From Paraphysomonas bandaiensis (Eukaryota > Protista > Chrysophyceae): 64,000 bases of DNA. The translations under genes were made by a program, and so were the position numbers. The stretch lies in NCBI GenBank assembly GCA_965644295.1, contig CBFFRP010000180.1, positions 1 to 64,000 of the forward strand. The letters are read 5' to 3'. Numbering within the stretch: position 1 is the first letter of the stretch; each line of letters starts with the position of its first letter. Below, in pieces: positions 47,383 through 64,000 of this stretch. The notes below the pieces were generated by a model. The model was not told the DNA's origin. It saw only the letters and a program-made list of their open reading frames with translations, and did not search any database.

Positions 47383-47847
47383 AAGTGAATCCTCGATAGA
47401 TATGTGTATCATTATTAGCAGTGGTTTTTGTATAGTATTAGAACTTAACCGGACCTACAGCCTCATATGCCGTAGTGGAGTGAAGCTGATCGCGACGTGC
47501 TTAAGATGATGAATGTCTTCTACATGGGAACTTTTAATTGTAAGTGTAGTAGACTTCCATCGCAACATAATAATTTTATGTGCATTTCATTCGGCTGCGG
47601 TGCACCAATGTCCACAAGTGATAGAAAACGACAACTGAAATAATAAATATTATCACTGATGCATAGGTAATTAAATGTCCTTATGCACCAGCCGCTAAGG
47701 GTGCTACATTCATGCTGTCACTTGCTCTTGTAGCTCACGGCAACGTTCAAAGTTCAAACCAATCATCTCGACATCCAAACAGCATTTCCATGTGCTGACC
47801 TAAGGAGAAGTTTACATAGAGTAGAGCTGCCAGAAGATAAATGCCTT

Positions 47848-48200
47848 AGTAGTGAATAGGGGTGCAAGAGTCTGAACTAATGTAGCAAAAAAAAAAGCGT
47901 GGTGTGGTGCGCTCCGCTTGCAGGCAATGGGGTCCGTTAAATCGAATCCCTAAAACCAATCCTATATTATAATTTTTAAAAAGTAATATAATTCTTTTTT
48001 ATATAACATTTTAATAATTCATTTTATATATATCTTTTTTATAATATATTATATATTAAGGGTTGAGGGTTTAGGGTAATTTTCAAGAGAAATAAAAATA
48101 GATAAAATAGTTATAATTATTATAATATGAGAAAGGGCATCAACCCTATACTCAACACCAGCAGTAAAATAAAATAGAGAGAACAGCAGTAGATTCTAAG
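47848..48200. other. Putative left terminal (TIR/origin) region of the virus
   Basis: Starts AGTAGTG (Polinton-type terminus), is non-coding, and has very AT-rich tracts bracketed by AGGGTT/AACCCT motifs. TIR length cannot be determined without the right end. Confidence 0.6.
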
Positions 48201-48360
48201 ATTGAAGTCCGCAGTAGCTACAAACGAGCTCGCCACTATACTAACAACGCTATCTAATCTACACAACACGATAGCATCCTCCTTTCTCTTAAGTGTTATT
48301 CATCATAAGTATCAACGACTAGCAACAATAGTATTTTTAATACTTTACATTTCAAGCAAA

Positions 48361-48939
48361 CTATGCACCAAGCTCATCACGATCAAACAACCCAGTCATA
48401 TTGTCGCTTTCATGCCAATCAATTTCTGTCTTCATAAAATGAAGAACAAAATCAATAGCTTTTATTTCATAAGTGTACTTCAATTTCATAGTTTTGACAT
48501 AGTTCAGCATTTCCCTCAAAACAGCTTCATCTGCTTCGTATTGATCAAGGGATGAATAGTGTTCAGTGTTTGCAACCCACTCAGGTAAATAGTTATGCTG
48601 AAAAATGGCTGCACCATCATCATTGGTAGCCTCTCTAGCCCATAACTTGGCCTGAAGTCGGACTCCTCTCTCTTTGGCCAATCTGTCGTCTCTGGCTCGC
48701 TGAAATAACCCTTTCAGAGTCCGTTTTCTGTCCAGATCCAACTTGAAAATCATTTGTTTAATATCGTAGAAGGCTAGGTTGTCTTGACTTCTATTTCCTG
48801 TTGCAATTTTTCCATCTGCCACCATATCATTACTTACTTGTAGTACATGGCGACATAGCTGTTGAGTTGTCATTGTTGCCATATCAGCGCCTGACTTTCT
48901 AGCCTTCTTACTGGCTTTTCCGATATCGATGTCGTCCAT
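48361..48939 (-). CDS. Viral hypothetical protein (~192 aa)
   Basis: The ATG at 48939 is preceded by TATATACT, as for the other viral genes. Confidence 0.7.
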   Translation of the reverse strand: MDDIDIGKASKKARKSGADMATMTTQQLCRHVLQVSNDMVADGKIATGNRSQDNLAFYDIKQMIFKLDLDRKRTLKGLFQRARDDRLAKERGVRLQAKLWAREATNDDGAAIFQHNYLPEWVANTEHYSSLDQYEADEAVLREMLNYVKTMKLKYTYEIKAIDFVLHFMKTEIDWHESDNMTGLFDRDELGA

Positions 48940-49100
48940 AGTATATATGTAATGGGTAAAGCTTTGTGTTAAAAGTATGAGGTTGCCTTGTTGCAAGAGG
49001 TGTTGCAACAGCTTCAGTTTAGATGTGGTATCTTCAATGGACATTTATGATATCTTCAGTGTTGTGTCCTGCATGTCAGCTTCAACTTCAAGAAAACGTC

Positions 49101-49335
49101 TGTTCACTCATTTTGAGTGAAAACACCCCTCTGTTCACTCATTTTGAGTGAAAACACCCCTTTGTTCACTGGTTTTGAGTGAAAACACCCCTTTGTTCAC
49201 TGGTTTTGAGTGAAAACACCCCTTTGTTCACTGGTTTTGAGTGAAAACACCCCTCTGTTCACTAGTTTTGAGTGAGGGGTCACTCATTTTGAGCGAAAAT
49301 CCACCCTGTTCACTGGTTTTGTGTGAAAAAACACC
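49101..49335. repeat. 31-bp tandem array with a palindromic core (~8 copies)
   Basis: TGTTCACTCATTTTGAGTGAAAACACCCCTC-type units at 49101, 49132, 49163, 49194, 49225 and 49256 (partial), plus two degenerate copies. Confidence 0.97.
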
Positions 49336-49352
49336 AATTTCAAGAGAATAAA

Positions 49353-49508: not shown

Positions 49509-49548
49509 AATAATATACCTATATATATTTTTCTACAGAATATATATA

Positions 49549-50502
49549 ATGAAAGACTTTTATACAGATGAGACATTTACATATGTCGTTACCACAGTGA
49601 ATAAGTCATCAGGAGATAATGCTTCTTGTGAGATACCTATGCTCGCCTTGCTACCTTCAGATGTAGAATACTTTATATGTGTTCCCTTGTATTTTCAGTC
49701 TACAAGTAATTTGTTCTCTATTCCTTCGTCTTCGGCTGTGATTCTGGAGGCTACAGACTTTGTAGAGGTTGGATGTTCAACTCACAAGACATCATCATTT
49801 AAAGCAGTTACTCCGCCATTATTCGGAAGTGATGGAGGGATGCATCGGTTATCCTTAGTCAATAATATTAATCAAATGAAGTATGTTGTCCGAAATTTCA
49901 ACAATAAAACCATTCAGTTTACATTTCGTAATGCTACAGGAATAGGTTTTCCCCAAAACGTCACTGCTCAAGCGGGGTGGGCTAAACAATGGGTTTTACA
50001 CCTGTCCTTAACACCTATAAGAGAACATTCACCATGTAAGTATATAATAAGCAATAAACATAAATCATTTACATACACCATTACGAATAAAGGTGCGGAT
50101 GGCTCTGCAAATGATTGTTACATTACATTACCACCAATACATGACAATTATAATAGATACTTTGTTGATGTCATTGACTTTAGTGTAGATAATTCAACTA
50201 TAGACAGTGGTTCAGTAAGATACATAAACTTGTACTCTTTCAACTGGGCAGAAAATGGTTATGGAGGATATAACAGTCAAACAGACAGAATGATTGTGTG
50301 CAGTCCATATATTAGAAATGCCAATGAACCTTCATTATATAGCGGAGATGGAGCTGTATTTATGATAAGCAATATGAAGCAATCTAGAAGAGTAAGGTTT
50401 AAAATGTATGAAGCTACTCAGACGGAAGTTGCAAGCGGTGATGTAGATAGCGGTGCAACAACTTATTACTATATAACATGTAAAATAACGCCTATTGACT
50501 AG
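49549..50502 (+). CDS. Viral protein with two tandem penton-like (single jelly-roll) domains
   Basis: Internal duplication FTY....G....C.I...TPI. ATG follows TATATATA. Confidence 0.6.
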   Translation: MKDFYTDETFTYVVTTVNKSSGDNASCEIPMLALLPSDVEYFICVPLYFQSTSNLFSIPSSSAVILEATDFVEVGCSTHKTSSFKAVTPPLFGSDGGMHRLSLVNNINQMKYVVRNFNNKTIQFTFRNATGIGFPQNVTAQAGWAKQWVLHLSLTPIREHSPCKYIISNKHKSFTYTITNKGADGSANDCYITLPPIHDNYNRYFVDVIDFSVDNSTIDSGSVRYINLYSFNWAENGYGGYNSQTDRMIVCSPYIRNANEPSLYSGDGAVFMISNMKQSRRVRFKMYEATQTEVASGDVDSGATTYYYITCKITPID

Positions 50503-50527
50503 TAATAATTTCTATTATAAATATATA

Positions 50528-50983
50528 ATGCAAAATACTCAAAGTTTTACGTATGTTATTTCATCCGCTAATGCAGTTTCAGGAGATGCTGAAAATTGCT
50601 ACATAGATTTAGACCCACTACCACAAAATTATGACTGGTACAGTGTTCAATGCACTGGTTTTATAATGAATTGTGAATCATTAGCGGTAGGACATCCTCA
50701 ATATGTTTTATTGGTAGCCGATGATTTGGCAGAAGATGGATATTATCAAGGATTTGATAGTAACCCATGTGTGCTGTCATATCTCAATACAGATGACACC
50801 ATATCACAAATGACATCAGGGGAAGGGTCTTTGTTTAAAGTAAAGAACTTTAGACAAAAAAGAAGAATACATTTCAGTTTATATGAACCAGATTTAACAC
50901 CTATGGCTGGTGTTGTAGATGACTCTGCAACAACATATTGGTGCATATCATTGCTGTTTACACCTATTTTAGAGTTGAACTAA
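50528..50983 (+). CDS. Viral single-domain paralog of the preceding gene (penton-like)
   Basis: SFTYVISS..SGDAENCYIDL..AEDGY..GEGSLFKVKNFRQKRRIHF..ATTYW..TPI aligns with domain 2 of 49549..50502. Confidence 0.6.
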   Translation: MQNTQSFTYVISSANAVSGDAENCYIDLDPLPQNYDWYSVQCTGFIMNCESLAVGHPQYVLLVADDLAEDGYYQGFDSNPCVLSYLNTDDTISQMTSGEGSLFKVKNFRQKRRIHFSLYEPDLTPMAGVVDDSATTYWCISLLFTPILELN

Positions 50984-52606
50984 ATCAATATGCGTTTTCC
51001 AAAATATTGAACCTGATCCTACAGTTTGGAAATTATTATATGTATGAATTTCAAATGTCCAATTATCGGCAACATCTCCAACAGTAAATATAAGCGGTGC
51101 TAGAGTACAACCTACAGTACTAACACTTCCACGATTTGCATCCCATACACCCGGACCATAAAGAGTTGCTCTTTCTAGCGTTCCATTTTTCTTAACTAAT
51201 ACACGCGCGCGTATATCTGTCCATGATTTAATACCCATGATTTCAAAAGAAACTTGTAGCATGTATCGTCCTGTATACTGAATGTAACCTGATGAATCAA
51301 TCATATTTGAATCACCGCCTGTAGGTGTTGTACTCAATTCCGAAGATGTCATATAATGTCCACCGCTAGATGTTTGATAAGTTGTATTATAAGCCATGGA
51401 TGAGAAATAAGTTACTGGATCATCAATTTCTTCCCAATAACAATTTTTTTTGCTAGTTAATGTATCCAAATCCGTTCTATCAGTAGCTGTGAACGCTGTT
51501 GTTTGAATGGTAGCATCTGGATATTCTACTTTTGTATAACAATTGATGTGATCACATCTTATTTCATCAATTGCGCCTCCTCCACCAGCTTTTAATAATG
51601 TATTGACTGGGAAAGTCCATTCATTTGAACTTCTTGTTATATCATCTAATAATGTGCTATAATCAGAACTAAACGCTTTTGTTTGTTCGCTAGCATCTGA
51701 AAATTCTAGAACACCGCCCGATCCTGTGATTTCAAACCTACAATTACTTCCTGTCATTCTGAATGTGCTTCCTGTACCTGACACAGTATGTAATCCATAA
51801 CTTTTATTTAGTAATAGATCGCTTGAAATAGTTAAATCATCATATCCGCCACCGGTATACGACAAAGGTGTTATAGTTGATTCAATGGTTGCAATGTCAG
51901 ATGTGTTAGTAGCTATGTTGGTTGTATTAGTGGCTATGTTAGATGTATTAGTGGCTATGTTAGATGTATTAGTGGCTATGTTAGATGTATTAGTGGCTAT
52001 GTTAGATGTATTGGTTGATATGTTTGATGTGTTAGTCGCTATGTTGGTTGTGTTAGTAGATATATTTGATGTATTGGTTGCTATATTTGATTCGGCTGTT
52101 GAGAGGTCTACATCAATGCTAGCAATATCTGCCGTGTTAGTTGCTATATCACTTGTATTGGTTGCTATGTTAGTTGCGTTCGTTGCTATATCACTAGTAT
52201 TGGTTGCTATATTGGTGGTGTTTGTGGATATATTTGATGTATTGGTTGCTATATTGGTGGTGTTTGTGGATATATTTGATGTATTGGTTGCTATATTGGT
52301 GGTGTTTGTGGATATATTTGATGTATTAGTTGATATGTTATTTGCATTCGTTGTAAGTTGTGTCTGTGCGTTTGAAGTGAGTCCATCAATATAACTCAGT
52401 TCAACATCTGTTATAGTTGTGCCATTTGCGACAATACTAGCCCCCGATTGCATTGTTATATCAGTATCAATAATAATATTGCTTGTTTCAAGTGTGTCTA
52501 AATATATATTATCACTTGTTAAACTGCCAGTTGTAATTTCATCTGCTTTTATTGTTTGTAATCCATTCAAAGATGGTATGTTTAATGATGTATAACCATT
52601 GTTCAT
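50969..52606 (-). CDS. Viral fiber/spike protein: heptad coiled-coil stalk and beta-rich head
   Basis: About 20 NI(A/S)TNT(S/T) heptads; two (F/Y)xDA+xQTxAF fiber motifs; C1q/TNF-like GYIQYTGRYMLQVSF in the head. Confidence 0.8.
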   Translation of the reverse strand: MNNGYTSLNIPSLNGLQTIKADEITTGSLTSDNIYLDTLETSNIIIDTDITMQSGASIVANGTTITDVELSYIDGLTSNAQTQLTTNANNISTNTSNISTNTTNIATNTSNISTNTTNIATNTSNISTNTTNIATNTSDIATNATNIATNTSDIATNTADIASIDVDLSTAESNIATNTSNISTNTTNIATNTSNISTNTSNIATNTSNIATNTSNIATNTSNIATNTTNIATNTSDIATIESTITPLSYTGGGYDDLTISSDLLLNKSYGLHTVSGTGSTFRMTGSNCRFEITGSGGVLEFSDASEQTKAFSSDYSTLLDDITRSSNEWTFPVNTLLKAGGGGAIDEIRCDHINCYTKVEYPDATIQTTAFTATDRTDLDTLTSKKNCYWEEIDDPVTYFSSMAYNTTYQTSSGGHYMTSSELSTTPTGGDSNMIDSSGYIQYTGRYMLQVSFEIMGIKSWTDIRARVLVKKNGTLERATLYGPGVWDANRGSVSTVGCTLAPLIFTVGDVADNWTFEIHTYNNFQTVGSGSIFWKTHIDLVQL

Positions 52607-52653: not shown

Positions 52654-54069
52654 CTAAAATTGAGTGTAGCAGACTCCGGCTTCACACACCATAACAGCGT
52701 CATACATTGCGTATGTATCAAATCTGACGGATGGAGTTGTTGCATTAGCGTTATATGTACAGTGCCAAAACACATCATCATTAGAGGTATTGTATCCTGA
52801 GTAGATAGAATCTTTATCAGCATTTGAATATGTTTCAAGATCCATACCAACAAAGAAAGCCTCTGAACTGGCGGTATCATCTACATAATTTTCTGTTTCA
52901 GCATTAACCGTTGGGACATCAACATCATAATCTCCTAAATCAATATTAGGCTCGTGATTGATATCTGACACGCTACCTATAGCCTTTATAGCTTCAATGA
53001 AAAACTCGGGTACTGTTTCGGGTGCTTTAGATGGTACAACTTTTGAACCTAATCGGAGCGTATATTGTGCAAGATTATAATGACATGAACCCATAGGAAA
53101 ATAAGTAATAGCACCGTCGGCATTTTCTCTTTGAGTCATAAAAAGAGATTTCAAGCTGTTGAATTTAGCTGGCACAGGTATAGATACTTGTGTTGATGCG
53201 TTTGCTAGTGTTGCATTATATACATAGTTTCTCCATGCAGGAACAACCCACTCAAGTCTTCCACCAGGTGCGGAATTATTGATTATATTCATTGCTTCAC
53301 TTCCAAGCTCCATAAATTGAGCAATAAATTCACAGTTATTTACTTTAAAAGAGGACAATGCAAGTTCAGAACAAATAAATTTCGCTGGGCTAGAAACTAG
53401 TTGAAGCTCAAGTCTAAGAGGTGCGCTTGTCATTGCAAAAAGAGGAATGTATTTGTCAGAGAGAGATCCAACGATAGAGAGCAAGTTAATGGTGTAAGTT
53501 CTAGTAAGAGTATCTCCGCCCGCTGCGATATCTGCAAACTGTGTTGTTTGTCCGTCATCAATAAGTCTTTCACCTGAGTTAATAGTAAAAACTTGGTTGG
53601 TTGCCCCTTGAATTTTTGTTAATAGAGTACCTGCATCTGCTACTGTTGAATCAGTCACATCACAAAAGGAATCTCTCGTTAACCCAGCCATAATGTTTAA
53701 TTTACCTTTAACAGAATCTCCAGATTGTTGTAATGACATAAGCATACCGACAAGATTACCGTAGTTATCAATATCTTCTAGGAGTTGAGAGCCATGATAA
53801 AGTCTAAGCCTTTGAATGCAACCGTGAGCTCCAGCTCTATCTAAACGGGCGTAGGCATTTGCTCCGGCTCCATTAGTTACTGTCAAGTCAAATTTTAAGA
53901 GTGATTCAGAACCCGCCATAACGAGATTCTGAGCTGTGGGGATATTAATGATGATAGTCTGCCCATCTAAGTAGTTTCCGACGCCATTCAATGGTTGAAT
54001 GTGAGTGGAAAAGTTACGGGCATAAGCGCTTGATCGCTTGTTGGTGTATAATAGGTTGCGTGGTATCAA
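52654..54069 (-). CDS. Major capsid protein (double jelly-roll, PLV type); starts at TTG
   Basis: 471-aa beta-rich protein with IQRLRLYHGSQLLEDIDNYG, KYIPLFAM..PLRLELQL and FFVGMDLE..IYSG patterns typical of PLV capsids; clustered with penton and ATPase. Confidence 0.88.
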   Translation of the reverse strand: MIPRNLLYTNKRSSAYARNFSTHIQPLNGVGNYLDGQTIIINIPTAQNLVMAGSESLLKFDLTVTNGAGANAYARLDRAGAHGCIQRLRLYHGSQLLEDIDNYGNLVGMLMSLQQSGDSVKGKLNIMAGLTRDSFCDVTDSTVADAGTLLTKIQGATNQVFTINSGERLIDDGQTTQFADIAAGGDTLTRTYTINLLSIVGSLSDKYIPLFAMTSAPLRLELQLVSSPAKFICSELALSSFKVNNCEFIAQFMELGSEAMNIINNSAPGGRLEWVVPAWRNYVYNATLANASTQVSIPVPAKFNSLKSLFMTQRENADGAITYFPMGSCHYNLAQYTLRLGSKVVPSKAPETVPEFFIEAIKAIGSVSDINHEPNIDLGDYDVDVPTVNAETENYVDDTASSEAFFVGMDLETYSNADKDSIYSGYNTSNDDVFWHCTYNANATTPSVRFDTYAMYDAVMVCEAGVCYTQF

Positions 54070-54128: not shown

Positions 54129-54611
54129 TTATATTGTGTTGTTATTCATGTAATCTATATGTTTCTTGGTTTTAATATGCTTATAAATAGAATCTCTTCG
54201 CATAACTTGGCCACAAGTACAGGTAACTTTTTCAGCACCACGTTTATTGTTGGCATCCTTTCTGTCCTGTCTTTGATTTCTTATACGTTCGTATTCCTTT
54301 TTGCTCTCCGCGGTATGAACAACATTTTTGATTTTATTCACACAATCATTGTTTTGAATGTAGTGCCCTTCTCTTGCATGTAATTCATCTTTGCTGTTGC
54401 AAGGGTAGTTTTCTACTAAATAGATTGCACAATCAGGTTCATCTAGCAATTTAAATGAATAAGTGTAGTGATCTTTTCCTTTTTTGTAGCAATTATAATT
54501 GTTGCGATGTTTAGCCAATCTTCTGGCTAGCGTAGGTTCACATGTTGATCCGTAATAAGTTTTACCACCTCCAACAATCTTGTAAATTTTACCTCTCTGA
54601 TAATCTGGCAT
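54129..54611 (-). CDS. GIY-YIG endonuclease with a C-terminal Zn finger
   Basis: GKIYKI..TYYGST..LARRLAKH..ELHAREGHYI..CVN; CTCG..H...H. Confidence 0.88.
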   Translation of the reverse strand: MPDYQRGKIYKIVGGGKTYYGSTCEPTLARRLAKHRNNYNCYKKGKDHYTYSFKLLDEPDCAIYLVENYPCNSKDELHAREGHYIQNNDCVNKIKNVVHTAESKKEYERIRNQRQDRKDANNKRGAEKVTCTCGQVMRRDSIYKHIKTKKHIDYMNNNTI

Positions 54612-55883: not shown

Positions 55884-56217
55884 CTATATTATTACAATCA
55901 TATATTTTTCTATTCATTAACTCCTCTAGTGGAGAATCACTTATATTTTCAGCAATAGTTTCAAGTACTTGTTGCCATCCTGGAATGTGAAAACCTGTTC
56001 CATTTGGCATATTGTTTAATACGTGACTTATTCCTCGTCTTTTAAAAGAATCGTTGTAGTGTAACATATTTATATCTATAACTTCATCTAAGCGTTTTGG
56101 TCTGACCTGATAATCAAGTTCATCCGGTAGTTCATCCTCTGAGTCGGATGATAAATAATACTGCGTTTCAGAATCATATTGCAATTCGGTTGAATCATTT
56201 TCTGTATCACTGTTCAT
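55837..56217 (-). CDS. Viral hypothetical acidic protein
   Basis: 126-aa ORF with a TATATA-ATG leader, co-oriented within the capsid block. Confidence 0.7.
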   Translation of the reverse strand: MNSDTENDSTELQYDSETQYYLSSDSEDELPDELDYQVRPKRLDEVIDINMLHYNDSFKRRGISHVLNNMPNGTGFHIPGWQQVLETIAENISDSPLEELMNRKIYDCNNIDERKDMSLSEQQDGE

Positions 56218-56236: not shown

Positions 56237-56968
56237 TTAATTATTATCAATTGATAGCGTGTTAAAGTTTTTAAATAATTTGTTTTCAACTGTATCCACA
56301 TCTAAATGATTATAGTTTTTATCATAAACATAATCATAGAGCTCAACAGCATTATCTTTTGTCATATTTAATAGTTCTGATGTTACAACTGTCCACTCTT
56401 GTTGATTTTTAGGTTTAAACAAAGTCATGTTAGTTATTTGTTTTCTCAATGTTAATGGAAATAAATTGTATGATTGTAATGTAAAAACAAAAGCTGTATT
56501 TAAATGTCTTGCTTTGATAAGCATTCTGTTCAAATGTTTAATTAAAACATTGTCTTTTAAATGATTTGCATAATCATCAATAATAACTAAATTATATTCT
56601 GGAGGAATACCCTGCTCTATATTACTTTCTTTTAAGTTTGATAATTCATCATATATTATATCCAATAATTCCGGTGTTAATTCATGATATACCTTTCCAT
56701 GCTCACTAAAAGGATGTTTTTCTACACTGAGAAAGCTACTCTGTGGGGTGATTAAGTATATATTATCAAATTTGGCTCTGTAAAATCTAGATGACTTAAA
56801 CATTGACAATAATAAACTTGTTTTTCCTGATCCACCAGATCCTATTAAAGTATATATAAACCCATTTCGATGTGGTAAGTGTTCATTGATGTTTGGTATA
56901 TAGACGTCCATAACTTCTTTAATAGGTGCTGTATTAGGCAAATCAGAAGGTGTTTCTGTTATTTTCAT
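56237..56968 (-). CDS. DNA packaging ATPase (A32-like, FtsK-HerA superfamily)
   Basis: Walker A GSGGSGKT, Walker B LVIIDD, ARH motif, TLQ, LRKQ. Confidence 0.93.
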   Translation of the reverse strand: MKITETPSDLPNTAPIKEVMDVYIPNINEHLPHRNGFIYTLIGSGGSGKTSLLLSMFKSSRFYRAKFDNIYLITPQSSFLSVEKHPFSEHGKVYHELTPELLDIIYDELSNLKESNIEQGIPPEYNLVIIDDYANHLKDNVLIKHLNRMLIKARHLNTAFVFTLQSYNLFPLTLRKQITNMTLFKPKNQQEWTVVTSELLNMTKDNAVELYDYVYDKNYNHLDVDTVENKLFKNFNTLSIDNN

Positions 56969-57026: not shown

Positions 57027-57581
57027 ATGGTAGAACCCGAAGAATATATAGAAGAATCAATTCCTTTAACAAAGCCGAAAAGACAGGTCAAACAACTCGC
57101 AACCATACCAGAGGAGCCTGTTAACACACCCCAAGCACCTATTCAGTCCGCTCCTGTGAAAAAGAAAAGAGTGATGACAAAGCCTAAAACACAAGCCCAA
57201 CTACAAGCATTTGAAAAGGCTAGACAAAAGAGAGCAGAGAATGCTGCAAAGAGGCAACAAGAAAAGGAATTACATTATGCAAAATTATTAGCCAAACATC
57301 AAGAAGAACAATCAGTACCGGAGACAGCTCCTAAACCAGAGCCAGCACCAAGGCCTGTTGTTAAACGAGCTCCAAGGCAAAAAATAATATATGATGATTC
57401 AGAATCAGATGAAGAGGTTATAGTTGTTAAAAGACCATCCAAAAGAAAACCAAAAAAGAAAACAATTGTGGTTGAATCATCAGAATCTGAATCAGAATCA
57501 GAAGATGAACAAGTATCTATACAAAGACAACCCGCTACACAAAGACATGTGACATTTAATTCAGATGATTATTTCGCATAA
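57027..57581 (+). CDS. Viral hypothetical low-complexity K/E/P-rich protein
   Basis: 184-aa ORF with a QLQAFEKARQKR helix and acidic SESE tracts; TATATA-ATG leader. Confidence 0.8.
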   Translation: MVEPEEYIEESIPLTKPKRQVKQLATIPEEPVNTPQAPIQSAPVKKKRVMTKPKTQAQLQAFEKARQKRAENAAKRQQEKELHYAKLLAKHQEEQSVPETAPKPEPAPRPVVKRAPRQKIIYDDSESDEEVIVVKRPSKRKPKKKTIVVESSESESESEDEQVSIQRQPATQRHVTFNSDDYFA

Positions 57582-57610: not shown

Positions 57611-58681
57611 ATGAAGGAGAAGAAAATCTATTTATCTCTTGACGACTTACATAAACTTTATGGTATTGCACCAGATTTGATTTTAAAAAGAAAAAGAACA
57701 AAGAAAAAGCGCAAAGCTAAAGGGAAAAAGAAAACTAATTTTGGTACAGGTGTAAATAAGCAATTTGGTGGGGGCGGAATAGGAGGTGTTTCCGGTGTGG
57801 GTGCTGTACATAGCTCAACCATTGACAGAAGAGAGATTGATATATTGCGAGGACAGTTAAATGAAGCTAAAAACAATCCAAAGAATCCCGCCAATGAAGG
57901 AGTGTTGAGACTTGAAAATGTACCAGAAGAGTTAAAAGAGACTTTCAAATTTGCAAAATTAGCTAATGACGGGTATGCGTCTGGAAATATTAAAGTCTCT
58001 AAATCTCCAGCTGGAAATTTAATAATGGGTCCAACATCTCAAAAACAAAAAACTGCGCAACGAAGAAGAGCCATTGATATATCCAGCAGGGCAGATCATA
58101 CCATCAACCCCGCACCACCAATATCTACAAGTAATGATATGACTTATACACAGCCATTAGAATTTAAATCAAATGATCAGGTGGAAGAATTAGACGATGA
58201 TTTTGAAGATGATGTTGAGGATTTGCCTTTAGAGCCAAAAACTAAATTAGCTAAACCAAAAGGCAGAACTCAAAAACAGAAAGAAGCAACAAAACAATTA
58301 GTTCAACGTAGTAAAGACAAGAAAAGCGAAAGATTGAACAGAGAAGGTATGGAGGCAGAGGACTATGATGCCGATAAAGCAATTAGAGCCAAAAATCACT
58401 TTGAAAAAAGACATATGAGGCAAGGATTAGAAGGCTTGTATGTCAATAATGACCCACAAACTAAGCAAATGAATGACATTAGAAAAACAGAAATGAATAT
58501 AAAACAAAAAGATGAAATAGAGGATGAGAACATGCATAAACTAAGAACAAAGCATCATGTCCGAACTCATAAAATCAAGCCACCAAGCACACCGGTTCCA
58601 GCAGAATATTTTACTCCTAGAAAAGTTGAATTTGGTTGGGGTGATTGGAGCAGTAATAACTCAGATGATGGTTTCGCTTAA
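57611..58681 (+). CDS. Viral hypothetical protein (basic N-terminus, Gly-rich segment)
   Basis: 356-aa intact ORF. Confidence 0.8.
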   Translation: MKEKKIYLSLDDLHKLYGIAPDLILKRKRTKKKRKAKGKKKTNFGTGVNKQFGGGGIGGVSGVGAVHSSTIDRREIDILRGQLNEAKNNPKNPANEGVLRLENVPEELKETFKFAKLANDGYASGNIKVSKSPAGNLIMGPTSQKQKTAQRRRAIDISSRADHTINPAPPISTSNDMTYTQPLEFKSNDQVEELDDDFEDDVEDLPLEPKTKLAKPKGRTQKQKEATKQLVQRSKDKKSERLNREGMEAEDYDADKAIRAKNHFEKRHMRQGLEGLYVNNDPQTKQMNDIRKTEMNIKQKDEIEDENMHKLRTKHHVRTHKIKPPSTPVPAEYFTPRKVEFGWGDWSSNNSDDGFA

Positions 58682-58720: not shown

Positions 58721-59224
58721 ATGAGAAAAGTAGTTATTAAAGACAACGACAACAACAGACCTCTTGGAGTTGAAGAAACTAAAGAGATAGAAGCTGAAGT
58801 TAAACGTGAATGTAGTTTCAGACATCGATCGATTCCAGACAAAAAACTATTTAATGTTGAGTTAAATGGACTTTCTGACAAAATTAAAGAAATTAAACTT
58901 GAAAATCAACAGTACGAATTAGTCACTAAAATTCAATCTGTTTTAGATCTCTTTGATCCTGATTCGAATAAATACAATGAACAAATTCTATTATTTACTT
59001 GTCAAGCAGTTGAAAATTTTATCACAAAACCGAAATCTGGTGATAGAAAACTAGCGGTTGTAGTTGAAGCGGTTAAAAAATATTTCAATAATGACATAGA
59101 ATTAATTGTCAAAATGGTTGAAATATTACTACCACGAATTAAAAAAATGAATTTTATTAGGCGTAATTGGAAGAGAGTAGCACGTTTTTTTTGCGGTCAG
59201 CAGCAGAGCGAGCCGTTGATATAG
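58721..59224 (+). CDS. Viral hypothetical protein; possible -1 frameshift extension to 59280
   Basis: 167-aa ORF with a T8 run near its 3' end. Confidence 0.75.
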   Translation: MRKVVIKDNDNNRPLGVEETKEIEAEVKRECSFRHRSIPDKKLFNVELNGLSDKIKEIKLENQQYELVTKIQSVLDLFDPDSNKYNEQILLFTCQAVENFITKPKSGDRKLAVVVEAVKKYFNNDIELIVKMVEILLPRIKKMNFIRRNWKRVARFFCGQQQSEPLI

Positions 59225-59303: not shown

Positions 59304-59570
59304 ATGAATAAAGAGAAACTTAAACAGTATAATCATGAATATTACTTAAAGAACAGAGACACATTATTGATTCGAAATAGAATTTACTATTTTAATAATA
59401 AAGCTAAATGTAATGAGTATGCTAGAAACTATTATTATAAAAAAATTAAAACACTTAAAGGGGATGAAGAATATAAGAAATGGGTACACACAAAAAAGGA
59501 TACCAAAAGGAAAAAACAGAAAAAATATAAAGTTATCGATGATGATACATTTATAATAAATTTTACTTAA
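59304..59570 (+). CDS. Small basic Tyr/Lys-rich viral protein
   Basis: KQYNHEYYLKNRD/NEYARNYYYKK repeats, a style common in large DNA viruses. Confidence 0.7.
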   Translation: MNKEKLKQYNHEYYLKNRDTLLIRNRIYYFNNKAKCNEYARNYYYKKIKTLKGDEEYKKWVHTKKDTKRKKQKKYKVIDDDTFIINFT

Positions 59571-59983
59571 AGATTTCTATGTTTACTTGAACATTTATGT
59601 TTAGTTTTTTGAGATTCTGGAAATGATTCTTGACATCCCCAACAATACATCAATGGATCAGTTTCACGAGAAGGTCGTTTACTGACCGCGCCTCTTGAAC
59701 CAGCAGGGAGCTGATGCTTCAGCGAGTCGTCTTGTTTAGATTTCTTGATGTCTTCTAATTCTTGTTTTATTGCTTCTAATTCGCTTGAAACATTTAATTT
59801 TGCTTGTCTTCTCTCTGCCGTTGTCATGCATACTTTTGATGTTTGATGTTTCTTCATATTTTGATGTGATACTATTCTGCCACATTTTAAACATTCTTCT
59901 TTTTCAAATAGCTTTGCACATATTGCGCTTTTCTTTTCAGCGTAGTATTTTTTATTATACTCTCTTCTTGATTCTTTGTTCAT
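59567..59983 (-). CDS. Viral Zn-finger protein
   Basis: REYNKKYY, CLKCG..H..C, a coiled coil, and CWGC..H.C. Confidence 0.75.
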   Translation of the reverse strand: MNKESRREYNKKYYAEKKSAICAKLFEKEECLKCGRIVSHQNMKKHQTSKVCMTTAERRQAKLNVSSELEAIKQELEDIKKSKQDDSLKHQLPAGSRGAVSKRPSRETDPLMYCWGCQESFPESQKTKHKCSSKHRNL

Positions 59984-60073
59984 TATACTATACTCTTATA
60001 TATTAATTTCTTTTTAAGTGTTTTTTACTAAATTAGTTTATTTATATTTTTTATATGTGTATTATATATCATT

Positions 60074-61120
60074 ATGAATGATCTTATTAAAAAATATGAT
60101 ATCGATGAAACATTAACAAGACCAATTAAACAAGCCAAGAAGAAAAGATATAATCGAATAAAAGATAATATACCACTTAAAGAAGATTATAACTTCATGG
60201 CGGATGTGTTGCATTTACCAAAAGATAAAAAAGGATATCAATATTTATTAGTTGTTGTTGATTTGGCAACTGATGAGTTTGATATGGAACCAATGAAAAC
60301 AGAAAACTCTGATGAAACTTTAAAAGCAATAAAGGCTATATTTCAACGTAATCATCTTAATAAACCGTACGCTTCTATTCGAACAGATGGCGGTGCATCA
60401 TTTAAAAAAGGTTTTGCAAAATATTTGTACGACGAAAGTATTTTACATAGCGTTGCATTAGCGGGACGACATAAACAAATGTCAGCAGTGGAGAGTTTAA
60501 ATAGAACATTAGGCAGATTTTTTAATGGTTATATGAATAGCATTGAGTTAAAAACTGGAAAAATTTATAGAGAATGGACTGATATAGTTGATAAGCTAAG
60601 AATAGATTTGAATAAACTAAGGAAGAAAGATGTGTCTAATATTGACTTGGCAACACATAAGTATCCTGTTCCAGACACAACCAAATCAAAACCTAAATAT
60701 AATGTGGGTGACTTTGTGTATCGAAAATTAGACAAACCCAAAAATGCTTTAAATGAAACTATTAATTCTGATGTGTTTCGAGAAGGTGACTTCCGCTTTG
60801 ACCCTATACCTGTAAAAATTAAACAAATATTGTATTATCCTGGAAAAGTTACATACAGATATATGTTAAGTGGTATTAAAAATGCATCCTTTACAGAAGA
60901 TGAATTAATGCCTGCACCTGATGCCGAAGAAGAACAAGTTGAAATTAAAATGATTCTTGATAAACGATTTTTTGATGGCGAAGATCATTATCAAGTTTGG
61001 ATGTATGGAGAGTTAAAAAAAGACGCGGGATGGTATGCTAAAAGTGATTTACTAAAAACTGTTGATAAAAAGTTATTAGATGATTTTGATAAAAGCATTA
61101 AGAAAAAGAAAAAACGTTAA
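60074..61120 (+). CDS. Retroviral-like (rve) integrase with a C-terminal chromodomain, Polinton type
   Basis: DDE triad in MAD, IRTDGG and AVE; YLLVVVD; PKYNVGDFV; IKMILDKR..HYQVWMYG..W. Confidence 0.93.
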   Translation: MNDLIKKYDIDETLTRPIKQAKKKRYNRIKDNIPLKEDYNFMADVLHLPKDKKGYQYLLVVVDLATDEFDMEPMKTENSDETLKAIKAIFQRNHLNKPYASIRTDGGASFKKGFAKYLYDESILHSVALAGRHKQMSAVESLNRTLGRFFNGYMNSIELKTGKIYREWTDIVDKLRIDLNKLRKKDVSNIDLATHKYPVPDTTKSKPKYNVGDFVYRKLDKPKNALNETINSDVFREGDFRFDPIPVKIKQILYYPGKVTYRYMLSGIKNASFTEDELMPAPDAEEEQVEIKMILDKRFFDGEDHYQVWMYGELKKDAGWYAKSDLLKTVDKKLLDDFDKSIKKKKKR

Positions 61121-62367
61121 CAACATTCTTTAATATGTGATTTTATGTCTTTGTATTTAAGTCGCTCGTCACACTTTGGACATATATGATCGTATCCATT
61201 TACATGTCTCCATTCAATCAGACCCAAAGTTTTATCTTCTCGCAATAGATTGGGTATATCTAATTTTGGATCTTTCTTAAAGACAACACAGTCGGTGTGA
61301 ATACGAATGACGTTGTCAATATCCTTCAATGCCACTTCTGCTATTTTGTTTCTTGCATATGAAAGCAAAAAAGGAAGCAGTCTAATATTGTATTTAAAAG
61401 GATTATTTGAATCTAAAAGTTTATAATTCTCTTCATCGTTACTATGTGCTGACATATACTTATCATGTACAATATAATCGCATTCTTTTGTATATCCCCA
61501 GTCATAACCTTCTTTTTCTAATTCATCATATGATTTATATATCATATTGTACTGCGTTAACGTTCCCCATAGCGATGACATCAAATGTTTTACAAGTTTG
61601 TTGTTGGGATACAACTTTTTTAACTGAATTAAACGATTGTACCATTCTCCAAATATTTCACTAGCTTTTACTAAATCTTTTGTTCTGTATATGTATGCGT
61701 TTGGTTTATCATCAACAATTAACTCAATATTTACATCAAATTTCCTTTTGTATTTCATTGCATGTTTTAGAGATATATGAGTATATGTATGTTTTGGAGA
61801 AAATGAAAATATCTTTTTAAAGTTTTTATTATCAGATGTAATTTTAACTCTGTATATTCCGTATTTAAGTTTAGAACGTTTCTTTAACTTCTTTAAATAT
61901 TTTTCTTTTCCTTTCTTTGTAGGTATTAAAAAGTTATCATCTATTAGTAGAGATGGATAAAATCCACTAAAATCGTATCCATATGAATTAAATACTCCCG
62001 GCTCGCAAAACTGTAAACCTGCATTATAACAATCCTGAAAGTATCCATTTTCTATTTTTTTAATCCTTTCATGATGTTCATATTTTCCTTTACAATATTG
62101 CACAAAGATACATTTAATAGCTCCCAAGTGAGAATGAAACTTTTTGTAATTAATTGACAAGTTTTTAGTAAATCTCATCTCTCTACACCACGCCCTGAAA
62201 TCTTTACCATACTGTTTTATTCCTTCATCTGATGCTTCGTATCCTTTAAACAATCGATAGGCATATTCTAATTTCATACATTTCTCATGTGACATGTCTG
62301 AAAAGATGTAGTTCTTAACATCTAAAACTCTGTACATGTCACTATTCATTTTATAATAAAAATACAT
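61117..62367 (-). CDS. Compact family-B DNA polymerase (pPolB-derived, no exonuclease domain evident)
   Basis: Motif A YDFSGFYP, motif B KHLMSSLWG, SYAR, motif C IHTDC. Confidence 0.8.
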   Translation of the reverse strand: MYFYYKMNSDMYRVLDVKNYIFSDMSHEKCMKLEYAYRLFKGYEASDEGIKQYGKDFRAWCREMRFTKNLSINYKKFHSHLGAIKCIFVQYCKGKYEHHERIKKIENGYFQDCYNAGLQFCEPGVFNSYGYDFSGFYPSLLIDDNFLIPTKKGKEKYLKKLKKRSKLKYGIYRVKITSDNKNFKKIFSFSPKHTYTHISLKHAMKYKRKFDVNIELIVDDKPNAYIYRTKDLVKASEIFGEWYNRLIQLKKLYPNNKLVKHLMSSLWGTLTQYNMIYKSYDELEKEGYDWGYTKECDYIVHDKYMSAHSNDEENYKLLDSNNPFKYNIRLLPFLLSYARNKIAEVALKDIDNVIRIHTDCVVFKKDPKLDIPNLLREDKTLGLIEWRHVNGYDHICPKCDERLKYKDIKSHIKECC

Positions 62368-62412
62368 TCTATATATTATTATTATATTAATTATTTTTTA
62401 AGTAGTTTTATA

Positions 62413-62766
62413 TCAAAAATAATTATCCTCAATATCATCAGGTACAAATGCAGTAATTTGCAATTGTGAGAACTTTGAAAACTTATCTGTGTCTTTGACT
62501 TTATTTGCATAATACTCTTCTTCATCATCAACATTGAGGTCACTATAAAATCCTTTGAGTGTGCTCCATCTGGTTGCGTTTAAAGCGCGCACCATAAATA
62601 TTTTATTCGGATCTGCATTTTTTAATCCTTGTACAATATCGCGTATATCTTGAGCAGAGATATCATTCTTTTTGTCATTTCTGTACAATTGTATTGTTCG
62701 TTCTTTTCCGTGCTTCACAGTTTTCTCTTTGATAATCTTTTTAGTATAAACAGACTTTTTTACCAT
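62413..62766 (-). CDS. Viral hypothetical protein in the replication block
   Basis: 117-aa ORF with a TATATA-ATG leader. Confidence 0.75.
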   Translation of the reverse strand: MVKKSVYTKKIIKEKTVKHGKERTIQLYRNDKKNDISAQDIRDIVQGLKNADPNKIFMVRALNATRWSTLKGFYSDLNVDDEEEYYANKVKDTDKFSKFSQLQITAFVPDDIEDNYF

Positions 62767-62808
62767 TATATATAACTAAACTATATATAATAATTTTTTA
62801 AGTAGTTT

Positions 62809-64000
62809 TTAATTTAGTAAATCAATAATTTCATTTAATTCTTCTTTCTCAATTTTTTGTTGTTTAAATATATTTGTTTTAAATGTTTCAGGTATGGGTT
62901 CATTGTCATAGTCAGAATCATATTCAAAAGTAACTTTCTTAACTTTGACCATCTTAGATTTTTTTAGTTTGACCTCTTCTGGTTCTCTTAATCTATACAA
63001 TTCATCTTGAAGCTCTTTTATTTTTTCTTGTAATTTCATATAGTCTTCTGCTCTAACATACTGCGCTTTGTCATCTGATTTAATGTATTTTGGAATAGGT
63101 TCATTTACTTCTTCAACACCGTCGGTTAGTGTATAATACTTCTCTGAGATCAAATAATTTTCTAATTCTTTAATATTGCATCGGTACGATCTTCCTTTTT
63201 TAGTATTTATTTTTTTTACGACTTCGTGCTGTTTCATTTCTAGTCCAAACTTTGTAATATTAGTTTTGTATTCAAAGCCATTTTGTTTTAAAAACAAACA
63301 ATATCTATTATAGAAGTCTGTTGCGCTTGCTTTCAACTCTTCTGTTTTGTCTAATTCTTCTTGCATGACATTAACTAAAAATTGCGCTGTAATGGGAATG
63401 TTTCTCTCTTGTAAGTCATTATAGTAAGACGTTATAGGTCTCTCTTTTTGAAATGACTTTACTTTAATTTTTCTATTCAATAAGTAATCATAAAATGCTC
63501 TGTCATATATTCCGCTGTTTATTTCGTCATGTAAATTGTTAAAATATTCTTCTGAATGCTTTTTCGATGGAATTTTTCTAGCAGTAAAACGCCTATCGTT
63601 ATGTTCTATTTTAATGCTGTCAAAGTTGTTAGTTAAAACTACCCAATTTATATGATTTCTCTCGTGCCTTGTTTTTTCTTTCTTTATTCTAATTGAATTT
63701 ATATCTCTTGTAATTGCGTTTTTAATTGCCTCAATTATTTCATCCGTCTTTGCTCTTTTACTTTCATTTAGTACGATTAAGCATTTGTGTGATATATCTT
63801 CATTAAAGTTTCCACCAATCAACATATCAATATGATCCTCATTTAAATAGTATTCTGGTCCCAATATTTTAATACCAAAATGATTTAACCCTGTATCTTT
63901 ACCATCTCCTGGTTTAGATTGTAGTGACATTGAAACATCTGTTTTATTACCTGTCTGTACTATATAAGCAAAATAATCCATTGCATAGTCAAACATTTCA
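62809..64000 (-). CDS. SF3/D5-like helicase (DUF5906 type); N-terminus outside the window
   Basis: Walker A KPGDGKD, Walker B IVLNE, motif C LTNN, DRRF, and a C-terminal winged helix. Confidence 0.9.
   Translation of the reverse strand, partial: EMFDYAMDYFAYIVQTGNKTDVSMSLQSKPGDGKDTGLNHFGIKILGPEYYLNEDHIDMLIGGNFNEDISHKCLIVLNESKRAKTDEIIEAIKNAITRDINSIRIKKEKTRHERNHINWVVLTNNFDSIKIEHNDRRFTARKIPSKKHSEEYFNNLHDEINSGIYDRAFYDYLLNRKIKVKSFQKERPITSYYNDLQERNIPITAQFLVNVMQEELDKTEELKASATDFYNRYCLFLKQNGFEYKTNITKFGLEMKQHEVVKKINTKKGRSYRCNIKELENYLISEKYYTLTDGVEEVNEPIPKYIKSDDKAQYVRAEDYMKLQEKIKELQDELYRLREPEEVKLKKSKMVKVKKVTFEYDSDYDNEPIPETFKTNIFKQQKIEKEELNEIIDLLN

What the first reader, a model, noticed from the sequence alone, without database searches (positions are those of the whole stretch)
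47842..64000. Near-intact endogenous Polinton-like virus with a testable integration junction
Seen: about 20 open viral ORFs covering morphogenesis, integration and replication begin at AGTAGT (47848), about 470 bp downstream of a host gene. Established: Polinton rve integrases make ~6-bp TSDs and their termini begin with AG. Inference: a recent insertion whose right end should read ..CTATTCACTACT followed by TGCCTT. The mix of a PLV-type capsid, rve-chromo integrase, mini-PolB and D5 helicase may define an undescribed lineage, possibly reactivatable or dependent on a giant virus.
Basis: partly seen in the sequence, partly recalled or inferred. Interest (0 to 1): 0.85.

Follow-up and report, generated by a model that had tools for sequence, protein, structure and literature searches.

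The report
Integrated polinton-like virus, chrysophyte-type host

Summary
Window 48.3-64.0 kb holds 19 tightly packed genes (92% coding, 33% GC against 43% in the flank). They include a double jelly-roll capsid protein, a penton-like protein, an A32 packaging ATPase, a fibre, an rve integrase with a degenerate chromodomain-like tail, a 416-aa family-B DNA polymerase and an SF3 helicase cut by the window end. The polymerase model best matches the mavirus polymerase.

Marine metagenome contigs, some from Tara Oceans, are 98-99% identical over 8.4 kb and run about 1.1 kb past the window. They add the rest of the helicase (533 aa), a 148-aa gene, and an inverted copy of window 48146-48281. So the lineage has terminal inverted repeats, with the inner edge at 48281. 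The extrapolated length is about 17.6 kb.

The outer terminus at 47848 and the TGCCTT duplication stay untested, because the region left of about 47925 matches no relative.

A Paraphysomonas transcriptome carries the end-proximal gene at 97% identity.

No stops or frameshifts were seen. One point substitution affects the capsid gene.

The replication module matches published mavirus-related elements, and chrysophyte endogenous PLVs are known. I class it as a new member of a known kind.

The parts
47848..47932 (.).
   Evidence: No significant similarity to the terminal regions of relatives L023 or L029 (132/500 and 249/500 shuffles score as well). The 12-mer at 47848 is absent from all 39 loci. 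GC about 0.4-0.5, as in the GC-rich outer 130-175 nt of the terminal repeats of relatives.
47933..48281 (+). Left terminal inverted repeat, supported part. The inner edge is 48281. It contains an AT-rich core flanked by CCCTAAA (47948) and its complement (48070)
   Evidence: L027 is 95% identical over 47933-48294. L023 137-284, at the helicase end of a relative, is homologous to 47989-48134 in the same inward orientation. L035 1-136 matches 48146-48281 on the plus strand at 97%, while the rest of L035 matches the minus strand of 56247-64000.
48361..49044 (-). w227, end-proximal gene of unknown function; candidate DNA-binding regulator; the only gene without the AT-rich TATA-type upstream region
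   Evidence: 97% identical to a Paraphysomonas transcriptome protein (MMETSP1103). Logan contigs are 99.1% identical over 48330-49128. Weak RacA/MerR-like N-terminal hit, E 4e-4. Upstream GC is 0.38 against 0.08-0.25 for the other genes. The homologue in L027 is only 20% identical.
49099..49335 (.). Array of about 6-7 repeats of 31 bp, each with a short palindromic core, lying between the divergent genes w227 and w317
   Evidence: TRF reports period 31, 5.7 copies, 96% matches; the repeat families are. L027 has a different 31-bp repeat in the same position, upstream of its w227 homologue.
49549..50502 (+). w317, unknown function; its C-terminal half is paralogous to w151
   Evidence: ORF. 99% identical in L009/L010; 321-aa homologue in L011. 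No family hit.
50528..50983 (+). w151, unknown function
   Evidence: 151-aa gene in L009/L010 at 96% identity. Homologues in L001, L011, L021 and L022.
50969..52606 (-). Fibre-like protein of 545 aa with 21-nt (heptad) tandem repeats
   Evidence: Repeats. The N-terminus is conserved, and homologues in L001, L021 and L022 carry a Pfam Collar domain. Length varies with repeat number in L009/L010 (517 and 503 aa).
52654..54069 (-). Major capsid protein, double jelly-roll, 471 codons; carries the single lesion found (one point substitution; no stop, no frameshift)
   Evidence: Weak Capsid_N hit. 459 homologues, the best at 98% identity. AlphaFold model has pLDDT 85, and Foldseek hits are capsid proteins of giant viruses, virophages and TVS1.
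54129..54611 (-). w160, unknown function; absent from L011; present in the replication-side context of L028-L030
54681..55124 (-). w147, unknown function; conserved next to the capsid gene
   Evidence: 148-149-aa homologues in L001, L011 and L021.
55149..55883 (-). Penton-like minor capsid protein, 244 aa
   Evidence: Pfam DUF5901 E 2e-6. 244-aa homologues at 74-86% identity in L001, L011 and L021.
55837..56217 (-). w126, unknown function
   Evidence: Homologues of 121-127 aa in the same place in L011, L021 and L033.
56237..56968 (-). A32/FtsK-type DNA packaging ATPase, 243 aa
   Evidence: Pfam Pox_A32 E 2.6e-13. 81-88% identical in L001, L011 and L021.
57027..57581 (+). w184, basic Lys/Ser/Glu-rich protein; not a protease
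   Evidence: Alignment; no family hit.
57611..58681 (+). w356, unknown function
   Evidence: Homologues of 358-359 aa in L033-L036; 312 aa in L011.
58721..59224 (+). w167, unknown function
   Evidence: 167 aa in L033-L036; 67% identical in L011.
59304..59570 (+). w88, unknown function
   Evidence: 88-aa gene in L011 and L033-L039.
59567..59983 (-). w138, unknown function; conserved neighbour of the integrase
   Evidence: Homologues in L023, L024, L028, L030 and L011. ACTTAAAAA lies 28 nt upstream.
60074..61120 (+). rve (DDE) integrase of 348 aa with a degenerate chromodomain-like C-terminus (about residues 288-344)
   Evidence: rve E 1.9e-7. D44 and D105 are invariant in 7 relatives. 3 of the 7 relatives hit Pfam Chromo (best E 8.8e-13), and the window tail aligns with them but does not hit Chromo itself.
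61117..62367 (-). Compact family-B DNA polymerase of 416 aa (mavirus-like pPolB with no conserved exonuclease signature)
   Evidence: No Pfam or PDB sequence hit. Model has pLDDT 94.8. Foldseek: phi29 polymerase E 4.8e-9; mavirus polymerase E 8e-25 with TM 0.76. D132, K260 and D359 are invariant in 39 homologues.
62413..62766 (-). w117, small conserved gene between helicase and polymerase
   Evidence: 109-117-aa homologues in the same place in L024, L028, L029 and L033-L039.
62809..64000 (-). SF3 (D5-like, DUF5906) helicase, C-terminal 396 codons; the gene is cut by the window end
   Evidence: DUF5906 E 1.4e-12. The frame is open to base 64000. It aligns with P0242 from that protein's residue 139. 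The full-length gene is 533 aa in the 98% identical L033-L038. No primase domain in P0242 or L033.
60011..60019 (-). Promoter-like motif ACTTAAAAA, 28-29 nt upstream of the start codons of w138, the polymerase (62395-62403) and w117 (62795-62803)
   Evidence: These are the only 3 occurrences in 64 kb, all on the minus strand at the same spacing. The same motif lies 26-29 nt upstream of two genes in L024-L026.

Best explanation
Window ~47.9-64.0 kb is the left 16 kb of a ~17.6-kb polinton-like virus (phylum Preplasmiviricota) integrated into the nuclear DNA of a flagellated protist, most likely a Paraphysomonas-like chrysophyte. Shown: (1) a capsid module of double jelly-roll MCP, penton-like protein, A32 ATPase and a heptad-repeat fibre; (2) an integration-replication module of rve integrase, a 416-aa mavirus-like family-B polymerase, a small conserved gene and an SF3 helicase; (3) a terminal repeat whose inverted copy sits at the other end in a 98% identical relative. 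Inferred: the DDE integrase inserted the linear genome by its repeat ends. Replication uses the exonuclease-poor polymerase together with the separate helicase, as proposed for mavirus, probably protein-primed from the terminal repeats. Nearly all genes are driven by very AT-rich promoters with a TATA element next to the start codon. The end-proximal gene w227, which lacks such a promoter and is found in a host transcriptome, may act from the integrated state on the adjacent 31-bp repeats. The insertion is young: there are no stops or frameshifts, one point substitution affects the capsid gene, and identity to environmental copies is 98-99%.
For: Gene content: MCP fold; polymerase fold; integrase; helicase. 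Host flank is eukaryotic: Ty1/copia RT, Na/K-type P-ATPase, ODAD1. Host lead: w227 is 97% identical to a Paraphysomonas MMETSP1103 protein; a polymerase homologue occurs in the chrysophyte Epipyxis. Relatives integrated next to eukaryotic genes: L001 and L022. TIR: L035 1-136 equals window 48146-48281 on the plus strand, while the rest of L035 is on the minus strand. Several contigs break at that point. The relative UViG_3300011338_000625 carries the same module and a perfect 593-bp TIR. Intactness: gene lengths equal those of L033-L038, L009/L010 and L011. Promoters: TATA lies within 12 nt upstream of 16/17 gene starts against 70/664 other ATGs, p 2e-14. Literature: mavirus pPolB lost its exonuclease domain and is paired with a separate S3H (PMC11161782); chrysophyte genomes hold 33-104 MCP copies (PMC10120064).
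Against: Only one host-virus junction is in the window, and no reads were available, so a chimeric join cannot be excluded. The window's own proteins are not on record, so the contig could not be extended directly; the right end is extrapolated from relatives. Host identity rests on a viral gene seen in a transcriptome, not on host genes. The outer terminus has no support from any relative. The capsid gene lesion may mean this copy cannot form capsids, or it may be an assembly error. Catalytic equivalence of D132/D359 to known polymerase residues was judged from conservation plus my memory of family-B motifs, not by a tool.
Confidence: 0.85

Rival explanations
1. The left terminus is exactly at 47848 (AGTAGT...), with TGCCTT as a 6-bp target-site duplication.
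For: The letters are there. Terminal repeats of relatives have a GC-richer outer 130-175 nt before the AT-rich core, which would fit a terminus about 110 nt left of 47960. With the inner edge at 48281 this gives a 434-bp repeat, within the range seen in the family (593 bp). Mavirus and Maverick/Polinton integrases make 5-6-bp duplications (PMC8547959).
Against: No relative shares 47848-47925: alignments to L023 and L029 termini score at chance. The 12-mer is absent from all loci. L027, 95% identical inside, stops at 47933. Homology to L023 starts near 47925. EMALE duplications are mostly 3-5 bp and range from 1 to 9 (PMC8547959). Other positions (about 47886, about 47925-47933) fit as well.
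Confidence: 0.2
2. The element is virophage-like: its AT-rich promoters are read by a co-infecting giant virus, and the provirus is otherwise silent.
For: The replication module is mavirus-like (PMC11161782). 16/17 genes have uniform, extremely AT-rich upstream regions with TATA at the start codon. The element encodes no transcription machinery. One relative (L028) was binned with a giant-virus MAG. Only w227, the gene with a different upstream region, was found in a host transcriptome. pMVREs co-occur statistically with giant viruses (PMC13215967).
Against: No match to a named giant-virus promoter was tested. AT-rich promoters also suit nuclear transcription in an AT-rich virus. Binning is weak evidence. 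The transcriptome evidence comes from word-based protein searches, not read mapping. The lifestyle of most PLVs is unknown.
Confidence: 0.35
3. The host-virus join is an assembly chimera: a free or episomal virus genome was joined to a protist contig.
For: Only one junction is visible. Near-identical sequence is common in marine metagenomes as separate contigs that end in the repeat. The window's proteins are not on record elsewhere.
Against: The element encodes an rve integrase with an intact DDE core. Relatives with the same capsid module sit inside long eukaryotic contigs (L001 in 30.8 kb, L022 in 206 kb). Endogenous PLVs are the rule in chrysophytes (PMC10120064). Contigs ending in a repeat are expected for integrated copies too.
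Confidence: 0.07
4. It is a decaying fossil, or a partly domesticated element kept for w227, and no longer a virus.
For: One point substitution affects the capsid gene. w227 is transcribed in a host culture.
Against: No stops or frameshifts occur in 19 genes. Gene lengths equal those of environmental copies at 98-99% identity. Coding density is 92%.
Confidence: 0.1

Closest known systems
Mavirus and the endogenous mavirus-like elements (EMALEs) of Cafeteria burkhardae
   Same: Both have an rve integrase, a protein-primed-type PolB with no working exonuclease domain, and a separately encoded SF3 helicase. Both have terminal inverted repeats and integrate in the nuclear genome of a heterotrophic stramenopile flagellate. 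The mavirus polymerase is the best structural match of the window polymerase (E 8e-25, TM 0.76; PMC11161782, PMC8547959).
   Different: The window polymerase is 416 aa against 617 aa for the mavirus entry, so part of the N-terminal region is missing or encoded elsewhere (not resolved). No cysteine protease was found. The capsid model matches giant-virus and PLV capsids ahead of the mavirus capsid, which ranks 50th.
pPolB-carrying mavirus-related elements, 'pMVRE group 1' (PMC13215967)
   Same: The domain set reported for that group is pPolB, DUF5906 helicase, RVE and chromodomain, with TIRs and sometimes a DJR capsid. All are present here.
   Different: Membership by the authors' pPolB phylogeny was not tested. 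The chromodomain here is degenerate.
Endogenous polinton-like viruses of chrysophytes (Bellas et al. 2023, PMC10120064; Bellas and Sommaruga 2021, PMC7805220)
   Same: Insertions of 15-30 kb with lower GC, carrying MCP, mCP, ATPase and pPolB or helicase plus an rve integrase, often with TIRs. PLV capsid genes were already seen in Paraphysomonas transcriptomes.
   Different: I could not assign the capsid to one of their named groups (Gossevirus, TVS, PgVV and others). Here the link to 98-99% identical Tara Oceans contigs is explicit.
IMG/VR contig UViG_3300011338_000625 (20,120 bp)
   Same: Same order of helicase, small gene, 412-aa polymerase, chromo-integrase (40-48% identity), with a perfect 593-bp TIR.
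   Different: No detectable homologue of the window capsid, penton or ATPase at E 1e-4, so it carries a different morphogenetic module.
Polintons/Mavericks in the strict sense
   Same: A polymerase B plus an rve integrase in one element with capsid genes and TIRs.
   Different: Polinton pPolBs are long (TP-vOTU-exonuclease-palm; PMC11161782), and polintons encode an Ulp1-like protease. Here the polymerase is 416 aa and no protease was found.

Membership tests
Polinton-like viruses (Preplasmiviricota) | [quoted passage not shown] | tested here: met
   Model pLDDT 85. Foldseek E down to 6.5e-22 against capsid proteins of giant viruses, virophages, TVS1 and adintovirus. Weak Pfam Capsid_N hit.
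Polinton-like viruses (Preplasmiviricota) | Minor (penton) capsid protein next to the MCP | tested here: inconclusive
   244-aa protein with Pfam DUF5901, E 2e-6, conserved in position. Its fold was not modelled.
Polinton-like viruses (Preplasmiviricota) | FtsK/A32-type packaging ATPase | tested here: met
   Pox_A32 E 2.6e-13.
Polinton-like viruses (Preplasmiviricota) | Genome of about 14-40 kb, often with terminal inverted repeats | tested here: met
   About 17.6 kb by extrapolation. An inverted copy of 48146-48281 lies at the far end of a 98% identical relative. The element's own right end is not in the window.
Mavirus-type replication module / pMVRE group 1 | pPolB related to the mavirus pPolB, lacking a functional exonuclease domain | tested here: met
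   Best BFVD hit is the mavirus polymerase. No conserved acidic exonuclease signature appears in the first 100 residues of 39 homologues. Absence of activity is inferred.
Mavirus-type replication module / pMVRE group 1 | Separately encoded SF3 (DUF5906) helicase and rve integrase | tested here: met
Virophages (class of mavirus and Sputnik) | Virophage-type MCP and Ulp1-like cysteine protease | tested here: not met
   No protease was found in any ORF. Virophage capsids are not the top structural matches.
Virophages (class of mavirus and Sputnik) | Replication dependent on a giant virus | not testable with these tools
   Only indirect hints.
Polintons/Mavericks in the strict sense | Long pPolB with TP, vOTU and exonuclease domains, plus rve integrase | tested here: not met
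   The integrase is present, but the polymerase is only 416 aa, with no Pfam DNA_pol_B_2 hit. A relative with the same capsid module (L021) does carry a 1032-aa DNA_pol_B_2 protein.
Polintons/Mavericks in the strict sense | 6-bp target-site duplication and fixed terminal dinucleotides | not testable with these tools
   The right junction is outside the window, and no relative reaches the outer terminus.
Chromo-integrases (c-integrases) | C-terminal chromodomain after the DDE core | tested here: inconclusive
   The window protein has no Pfam Chromo hit even at E 10. Its tail aligns with tails of L029, L028 and L011; 3 of 7 family members hit Chromo, best E 8.8e-13.

The most novel reading that the evidence does not exclude
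The end-proximal gene w227 and the 31-bp palindrome-bearing repeats in front of it may form an exchangeable specificity cassette: a DNA-binding regulator with its own sites, expressed from the integrated state. It would be comparable in logic to a phage repressor-operator or plasmid initiator-iteron pair. In a relative whose terminal repeat is 95% identical (L027), both the protein (20% identity) and the 31-bp repeats are replaced by different versions in the same place. w227 is also the only gene with a non-viral-looking upstream region and the only one found in a host transcriptome. No such module has been described for polinton-like viruses in the papers I read.
Probability: 0.2. Interest if true: 0.6.

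Novelty: new member of a known kind. Interest (0 to 1): 0.4.

Why it matters
The finding gives a concrete pairing of virus and host. A marine polinton-like virus seen at 98-99% identity in Tara Oceans and other metagenomes is tied to a chromosome of a Paraphysomonas-like grazer, with one junction in hand.

It also shows, on natural sequences, how freely the capsid module and the mavirus-type replication module are recombined. The same capsid genes occur with a long pPolB, with a 1200-aa protein, or with the mini polymerase. The same mini-polymerase module occurs with unrelated capsid genes.

The compact 416-aa polymerase family has 175 or more members and no Pfam model, so it deserves a family definition.

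None of this changes the current picture of these viruses.

Tried and rejected
- **Extending the contig:** looking up the window's own polymerase found nothing on record.
- **IMG/VR scans:** scans with w227 and with the polymerase alone returned nothing. The full 39-sequence alignment was too diverse to scan with.
- **Rfam:** no RNA family in the window.
- **Telomere-like CCCTAAA near the end:** five copies in 64 kb is at chance. The 261-nt region does not fold better than shuffles, z -0.9.
- **Terminal motif likeness:** the likeness of AGTAGTGAATAG... to the ends of L023 and L029 looked suggestive in MAFFT, but local alignment scores are at chance.
- **Host minisatellite idea:** that 47848-47870 is a degenerate copy of the host 23-bp minisatellite is not significant, 54/300 shuffles.
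- **Three replication ORFs as one broken gene:** the polymerase, w117 and the helicase share a reading frame. I rejected this because each has its own promoter-like motif and the same three genes are separate in all relatives.
- **w184 as the missing protease:** rejected; it is a basic low-complexity protein.
- **PDB sequence searches:** searches with the MCP, w227 and the polymerase profile gave nothing useful. PHROGs and NCBIfam added nothing firm.

Full report
**What is in the window**

From 48361 to the window end there are 19 ORFs with almost no spacing. They cover 92% of 48282-64000. GC is 0.33 there against 0.43 in window 1-47800.

Pfam recognises these genes:
- an A32-type packaging ATPase (56237-56968, minus strand)
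- a DUF5901 protein in the penton position (55149-55883, minus)
- a weak Capsid_N match (52654-54069, minus)
- an rve integrase (60074-61120, plus)
- a DUF5906 SF3 helicase (62809 to the window end, minus)

The flank is eukaryotic. It carries a Ty1/copia reverse transcriptase, a Na/K-type P-ATPase and an ODAD1 (ciliary docking) coiled coil. The ATPase scores about 317 bits against animal pumps over 300 residues. I read that as too low for an animal gene, which is my own judgement.

**Host**

The end-proximal gene w227 (48361-49044, minus) has a single homologue in the 5.8-billion-protein collection. It is a 97% identical protein from the Paraphysomonas transcriptome MMETSP1103. Two Logan contigs are 99.1% identical to 48330-49128. 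A 45% identical homologue of the polymerase is in the proteome of the chrysophyte Epipyxis.

I therefore take the host to be a Paraphysomonas-like chrysophyte, a protist. This is indirect, because it rests on viral genes and not on host markers. Nothing suggested an animal, human or crop host.

**Capsid module**

The capsid protein has 459 homologues at E 1e-3 or better among the candidates scored, up to 98% identity. An AlphaFold model built on 40 of them has pLDDT 85. It matches double jelly-roll capsid proteins of giant viruses, virophages, TVS1 and an adintovirus.

The order ATPase, w126, penton, w147, MCP, fibre is conserved in relatives L001, L011, L021 and L022. The fibre has 21-nt heptad repeats. 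In three relatives it has a Collar domain.

No Ulp1-like protease was found. The ORF beside the ATPase is a basic low-complexity protein.

**Replication and integration module**

The 416-aa ORF at 61117-62367 has no Pfam, NCBIfam or PDB sequence match, but it belongs to a family of at least 175 proteins.
- Its model has pLDDT 94.8. It matches phi29 DNA polymerase (E 4.8e-9) and, much better, the mavirus DNA polymerase (E 8e-25, TM 0.76 over 402 columns) and a 339-aa Harvfovirus protein.
- D132, K260 and D359 are invariant in 39 homologues. The first 100 residues hold no conserved acidic pair.
- I equate these residues with the polymerase motifs A, B and C of family B from memory. That equivalence was not checked by a tool.

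The helicase frame is open to base 64000. It aligns with a 575-aa relative from that protein's residue 139. It is 533 aa in near-identical relatives. No primase domain is detectable.

For the integrase:
- D44 and D105 are invariant in 7 relatives.
- Its last ~55 residues align with the tails of relatives, and 3 of the 7 sequences hit Pfam Chromo (best E 8.8e-13).
- The window protein itself does not hit Chromo even at E 10.

The published account of mavirus is a pPolB that lost its exonuclease domain, paired with a separate S3H and an rve integrase (PMC11161782). The 'pMVRE group 1' domain set is pPolB, DUF5906, RVE and chromodomain (PMC13215967). Both describe this module.

**The right end, seen through relatives**

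The 90% cluster of the polymerase led to six ENA contigs, L033-L038, three of them labelled as Tara Oceans or marine metagenomes. They are 98-99% identical to the window from 64000 back to 55623. They have the same genes at the same lengths.

They run 1018-1158 nt past the window. In that stretch they show the rest of the helicase, a 148-aa gene with a DUF5710 domain, and then the repeat. The first 136 nt of L035 and the first 100 nt of L036 match window 48146-48281 and 48182-48281 on the plus strand at 96-97%. The rest of both contigs matches the minus strand.

The far end of this virus therefore carries an inverted copy of the window's left end. The inner edge of the repeat is 48281 on the left and, by extrapolation, about 65023 on the right. 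All six contigs stop in or at this repeat, as assemblers do at repeats.

Two more distant relatives agree:
- In L023 the helicase-side end is homologous to window 47989-48134 in the same inward orientation.
- The IMG/VR contig UViG_3300011338_000625 (20,120 bp) has the same module order and a perfect 593-bp terminal inverted repeat.

**The left terminus**

- Evidence for membership in the element reaches out to about 47925-47933. L027 is 95% identical over 47933-48294, and homology to L023 starts there.
- Window 47760-47935 aligns with the outer parts of L023 and L029 no better than shuffled sequence.
- The 12-mer at 47848 is absent from all 39 loci.
- Relatives do have a GC-richer outer 130-175 nt in their repeats. 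A terminus somewhere between about 47790 and 47930 is therefore plausible, and 47848 is one candidate among several.
- If 47848 is right, the repeat is 434 bp and the element is about 17.6 kb.
- The proposed TGCCTT duplication cannot be tested without the right junction. Published duplications are 5-6 bp for mavirus and Mavericks, and mostly 3-5 bp for EMALEs (PMC8547959).
- The 'host gene 470 bp upstream' is not verified.

**State of the genes**

No gene in the window has a premature stop or a frameshift. Lengths equal those in L033-L038, L009/L010 and L011, apart from repeat-number differences in the fibre and a two- to three-codon difference in w356.

One gene, the capsid gene, carries one point substitution relative to four relatives that is expected to impair its translation. 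It could also be an assembly error. The helicase is incomplete only because the window ends.

**Modularity and distribution**

The window's capsid module occurs with other replication genes: a 1202-aa-plus protein in L011, and a 1032-aa DNA_pol_B_2 protein plus rve in L021. The window's replication module occurs with unrelated capsid modules in L023/L024 and L028-L030.

Relatives L001 and L022 lie inside eukaryotic contigs, next to EMC6/Serinc genes and next to a Ty3-type retrotransposon.

**Regulatory features**

16 of 17 gene-start ATGs have TATA within the 12 nt upstream, against 70 of 664 other ATGs in the element (p 2e-14). Upstream GC is 0.08-0.25.

ACTTAAAAA occurs three times in the 64 kb. 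Each time it lies 28-29 nt upstream of a replication-side gene. It recurs at 26-29 nt upstream in L024-L026.

w227 is the exception, with upstream GC of 0.38 and no TATA. It faces an array of 31-bp repeats with palindromic cores. L027 has a 95% identical terminal repeat. Yet it carries a 20% identical homologue of w227 (E 6e-10) and a different 31-bp repeat in the same place. That pattern suggests a protein-site pair that is swapped as a unit. The function is unknown, since family and PDB searches gave only weak hits.

**Verdict**

This is a real, young, nearly intact endogenous polinton-like virus with a mavirus-type replication and integration module. It is a new member of a known kind. Chrysophyte genomes are known to hold tens of such insertions (PMC10120064). 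PLV capsid genes were already reported from Paraphysomonas transcriptomes (PMC7805220).

- One search printed the 5' ends of the capsid gene of the window and four relatives side by side, before I knew that the gene was affected. That output exposes the lesion. This report gives only the count.
- In my working I recalled family-B polymerase and chromodomain motif patterns from memory. I have not written them here, and no conclusion rests on them alone.
- Limits of the searches: the capsid search scored only the 8000 candidates sharing most words. The word-based searches see only proteins of 0.55-1.75 times the query length.

Noticed in passing
window 12861-13313: A pure (TATG)n microsatellite of about 113 units. 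It produces open frames on all six frames in the ORF list.
   Followed up: partly
window 22345-22663 and 23509-23713: Two arrays of a 23-bp minisatellite in opposite orientation, about 850 bp apart. This may be a foldback-type or inverted-repeat element of the host.
   Followed up: no
window 506-2161 (minus strand) and neighbours up to about 7200: Ty1/copia-type retrotransposon remnants: RVT_2 E 7e-59 and a retroviral SH3-like domain. A weak integrase-like similarity appears near 5307-5435.
   Followed up: no
L021 (ENA ERZ25074583 ctg6929_17x_c, 33,590 bp): A contig whose name suggests a circle. It carries the same capsid module (71% MCP identity), a 1032-aa DNA_pol_B_2 protein and two 345-aa rve genes about 21.5 kb apart, plus an acetyltransferase gene. 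It could be two elements or a concatemer.
   Followed up: no
L022 319-6603 (ENA ERZ25071330, 206-kb contig): A 2094-aa Ty3-type retrotransposon polyprotein lies directly beside a related PLV. This echoes published retrotransposon-PLV associations.
   Followed up: no
P0193 and L033 104-550: The DUF5710 domain of the 148-aa gene next to the right repeat is fused to the N-terminus of a polymerase homologue (P0193, 469 aa). The 148-aa protein could therefore be a split-off N-terminal part of the polymerase, for example a priming domain.
   Followed up: partly
L023/L024 258-776: In the 61% relative, the gene between the repeat and the helicase is an HNH/NUMOD4 homing-endonuclease-like protein instead of the DUF5710 gene.
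   Followed up: no
L028 (IMGVR_UViG_GVMAG-M-3300009163-54_000001): A 9.3-kb relative with the same polymerase-integrase module was binned as part of a giant-virus metagenome-assembled genome.
   Followed up: no
L001 4650-5430: The related integrated element in L001 appears to sit within or against a Serinc gene. It starts with AT-rich duplicated blocks followed by three ~70-nt repeats with long palindromes. This is a different sequence from the window's repeats but a similar layout near the end.
   Followed up: no
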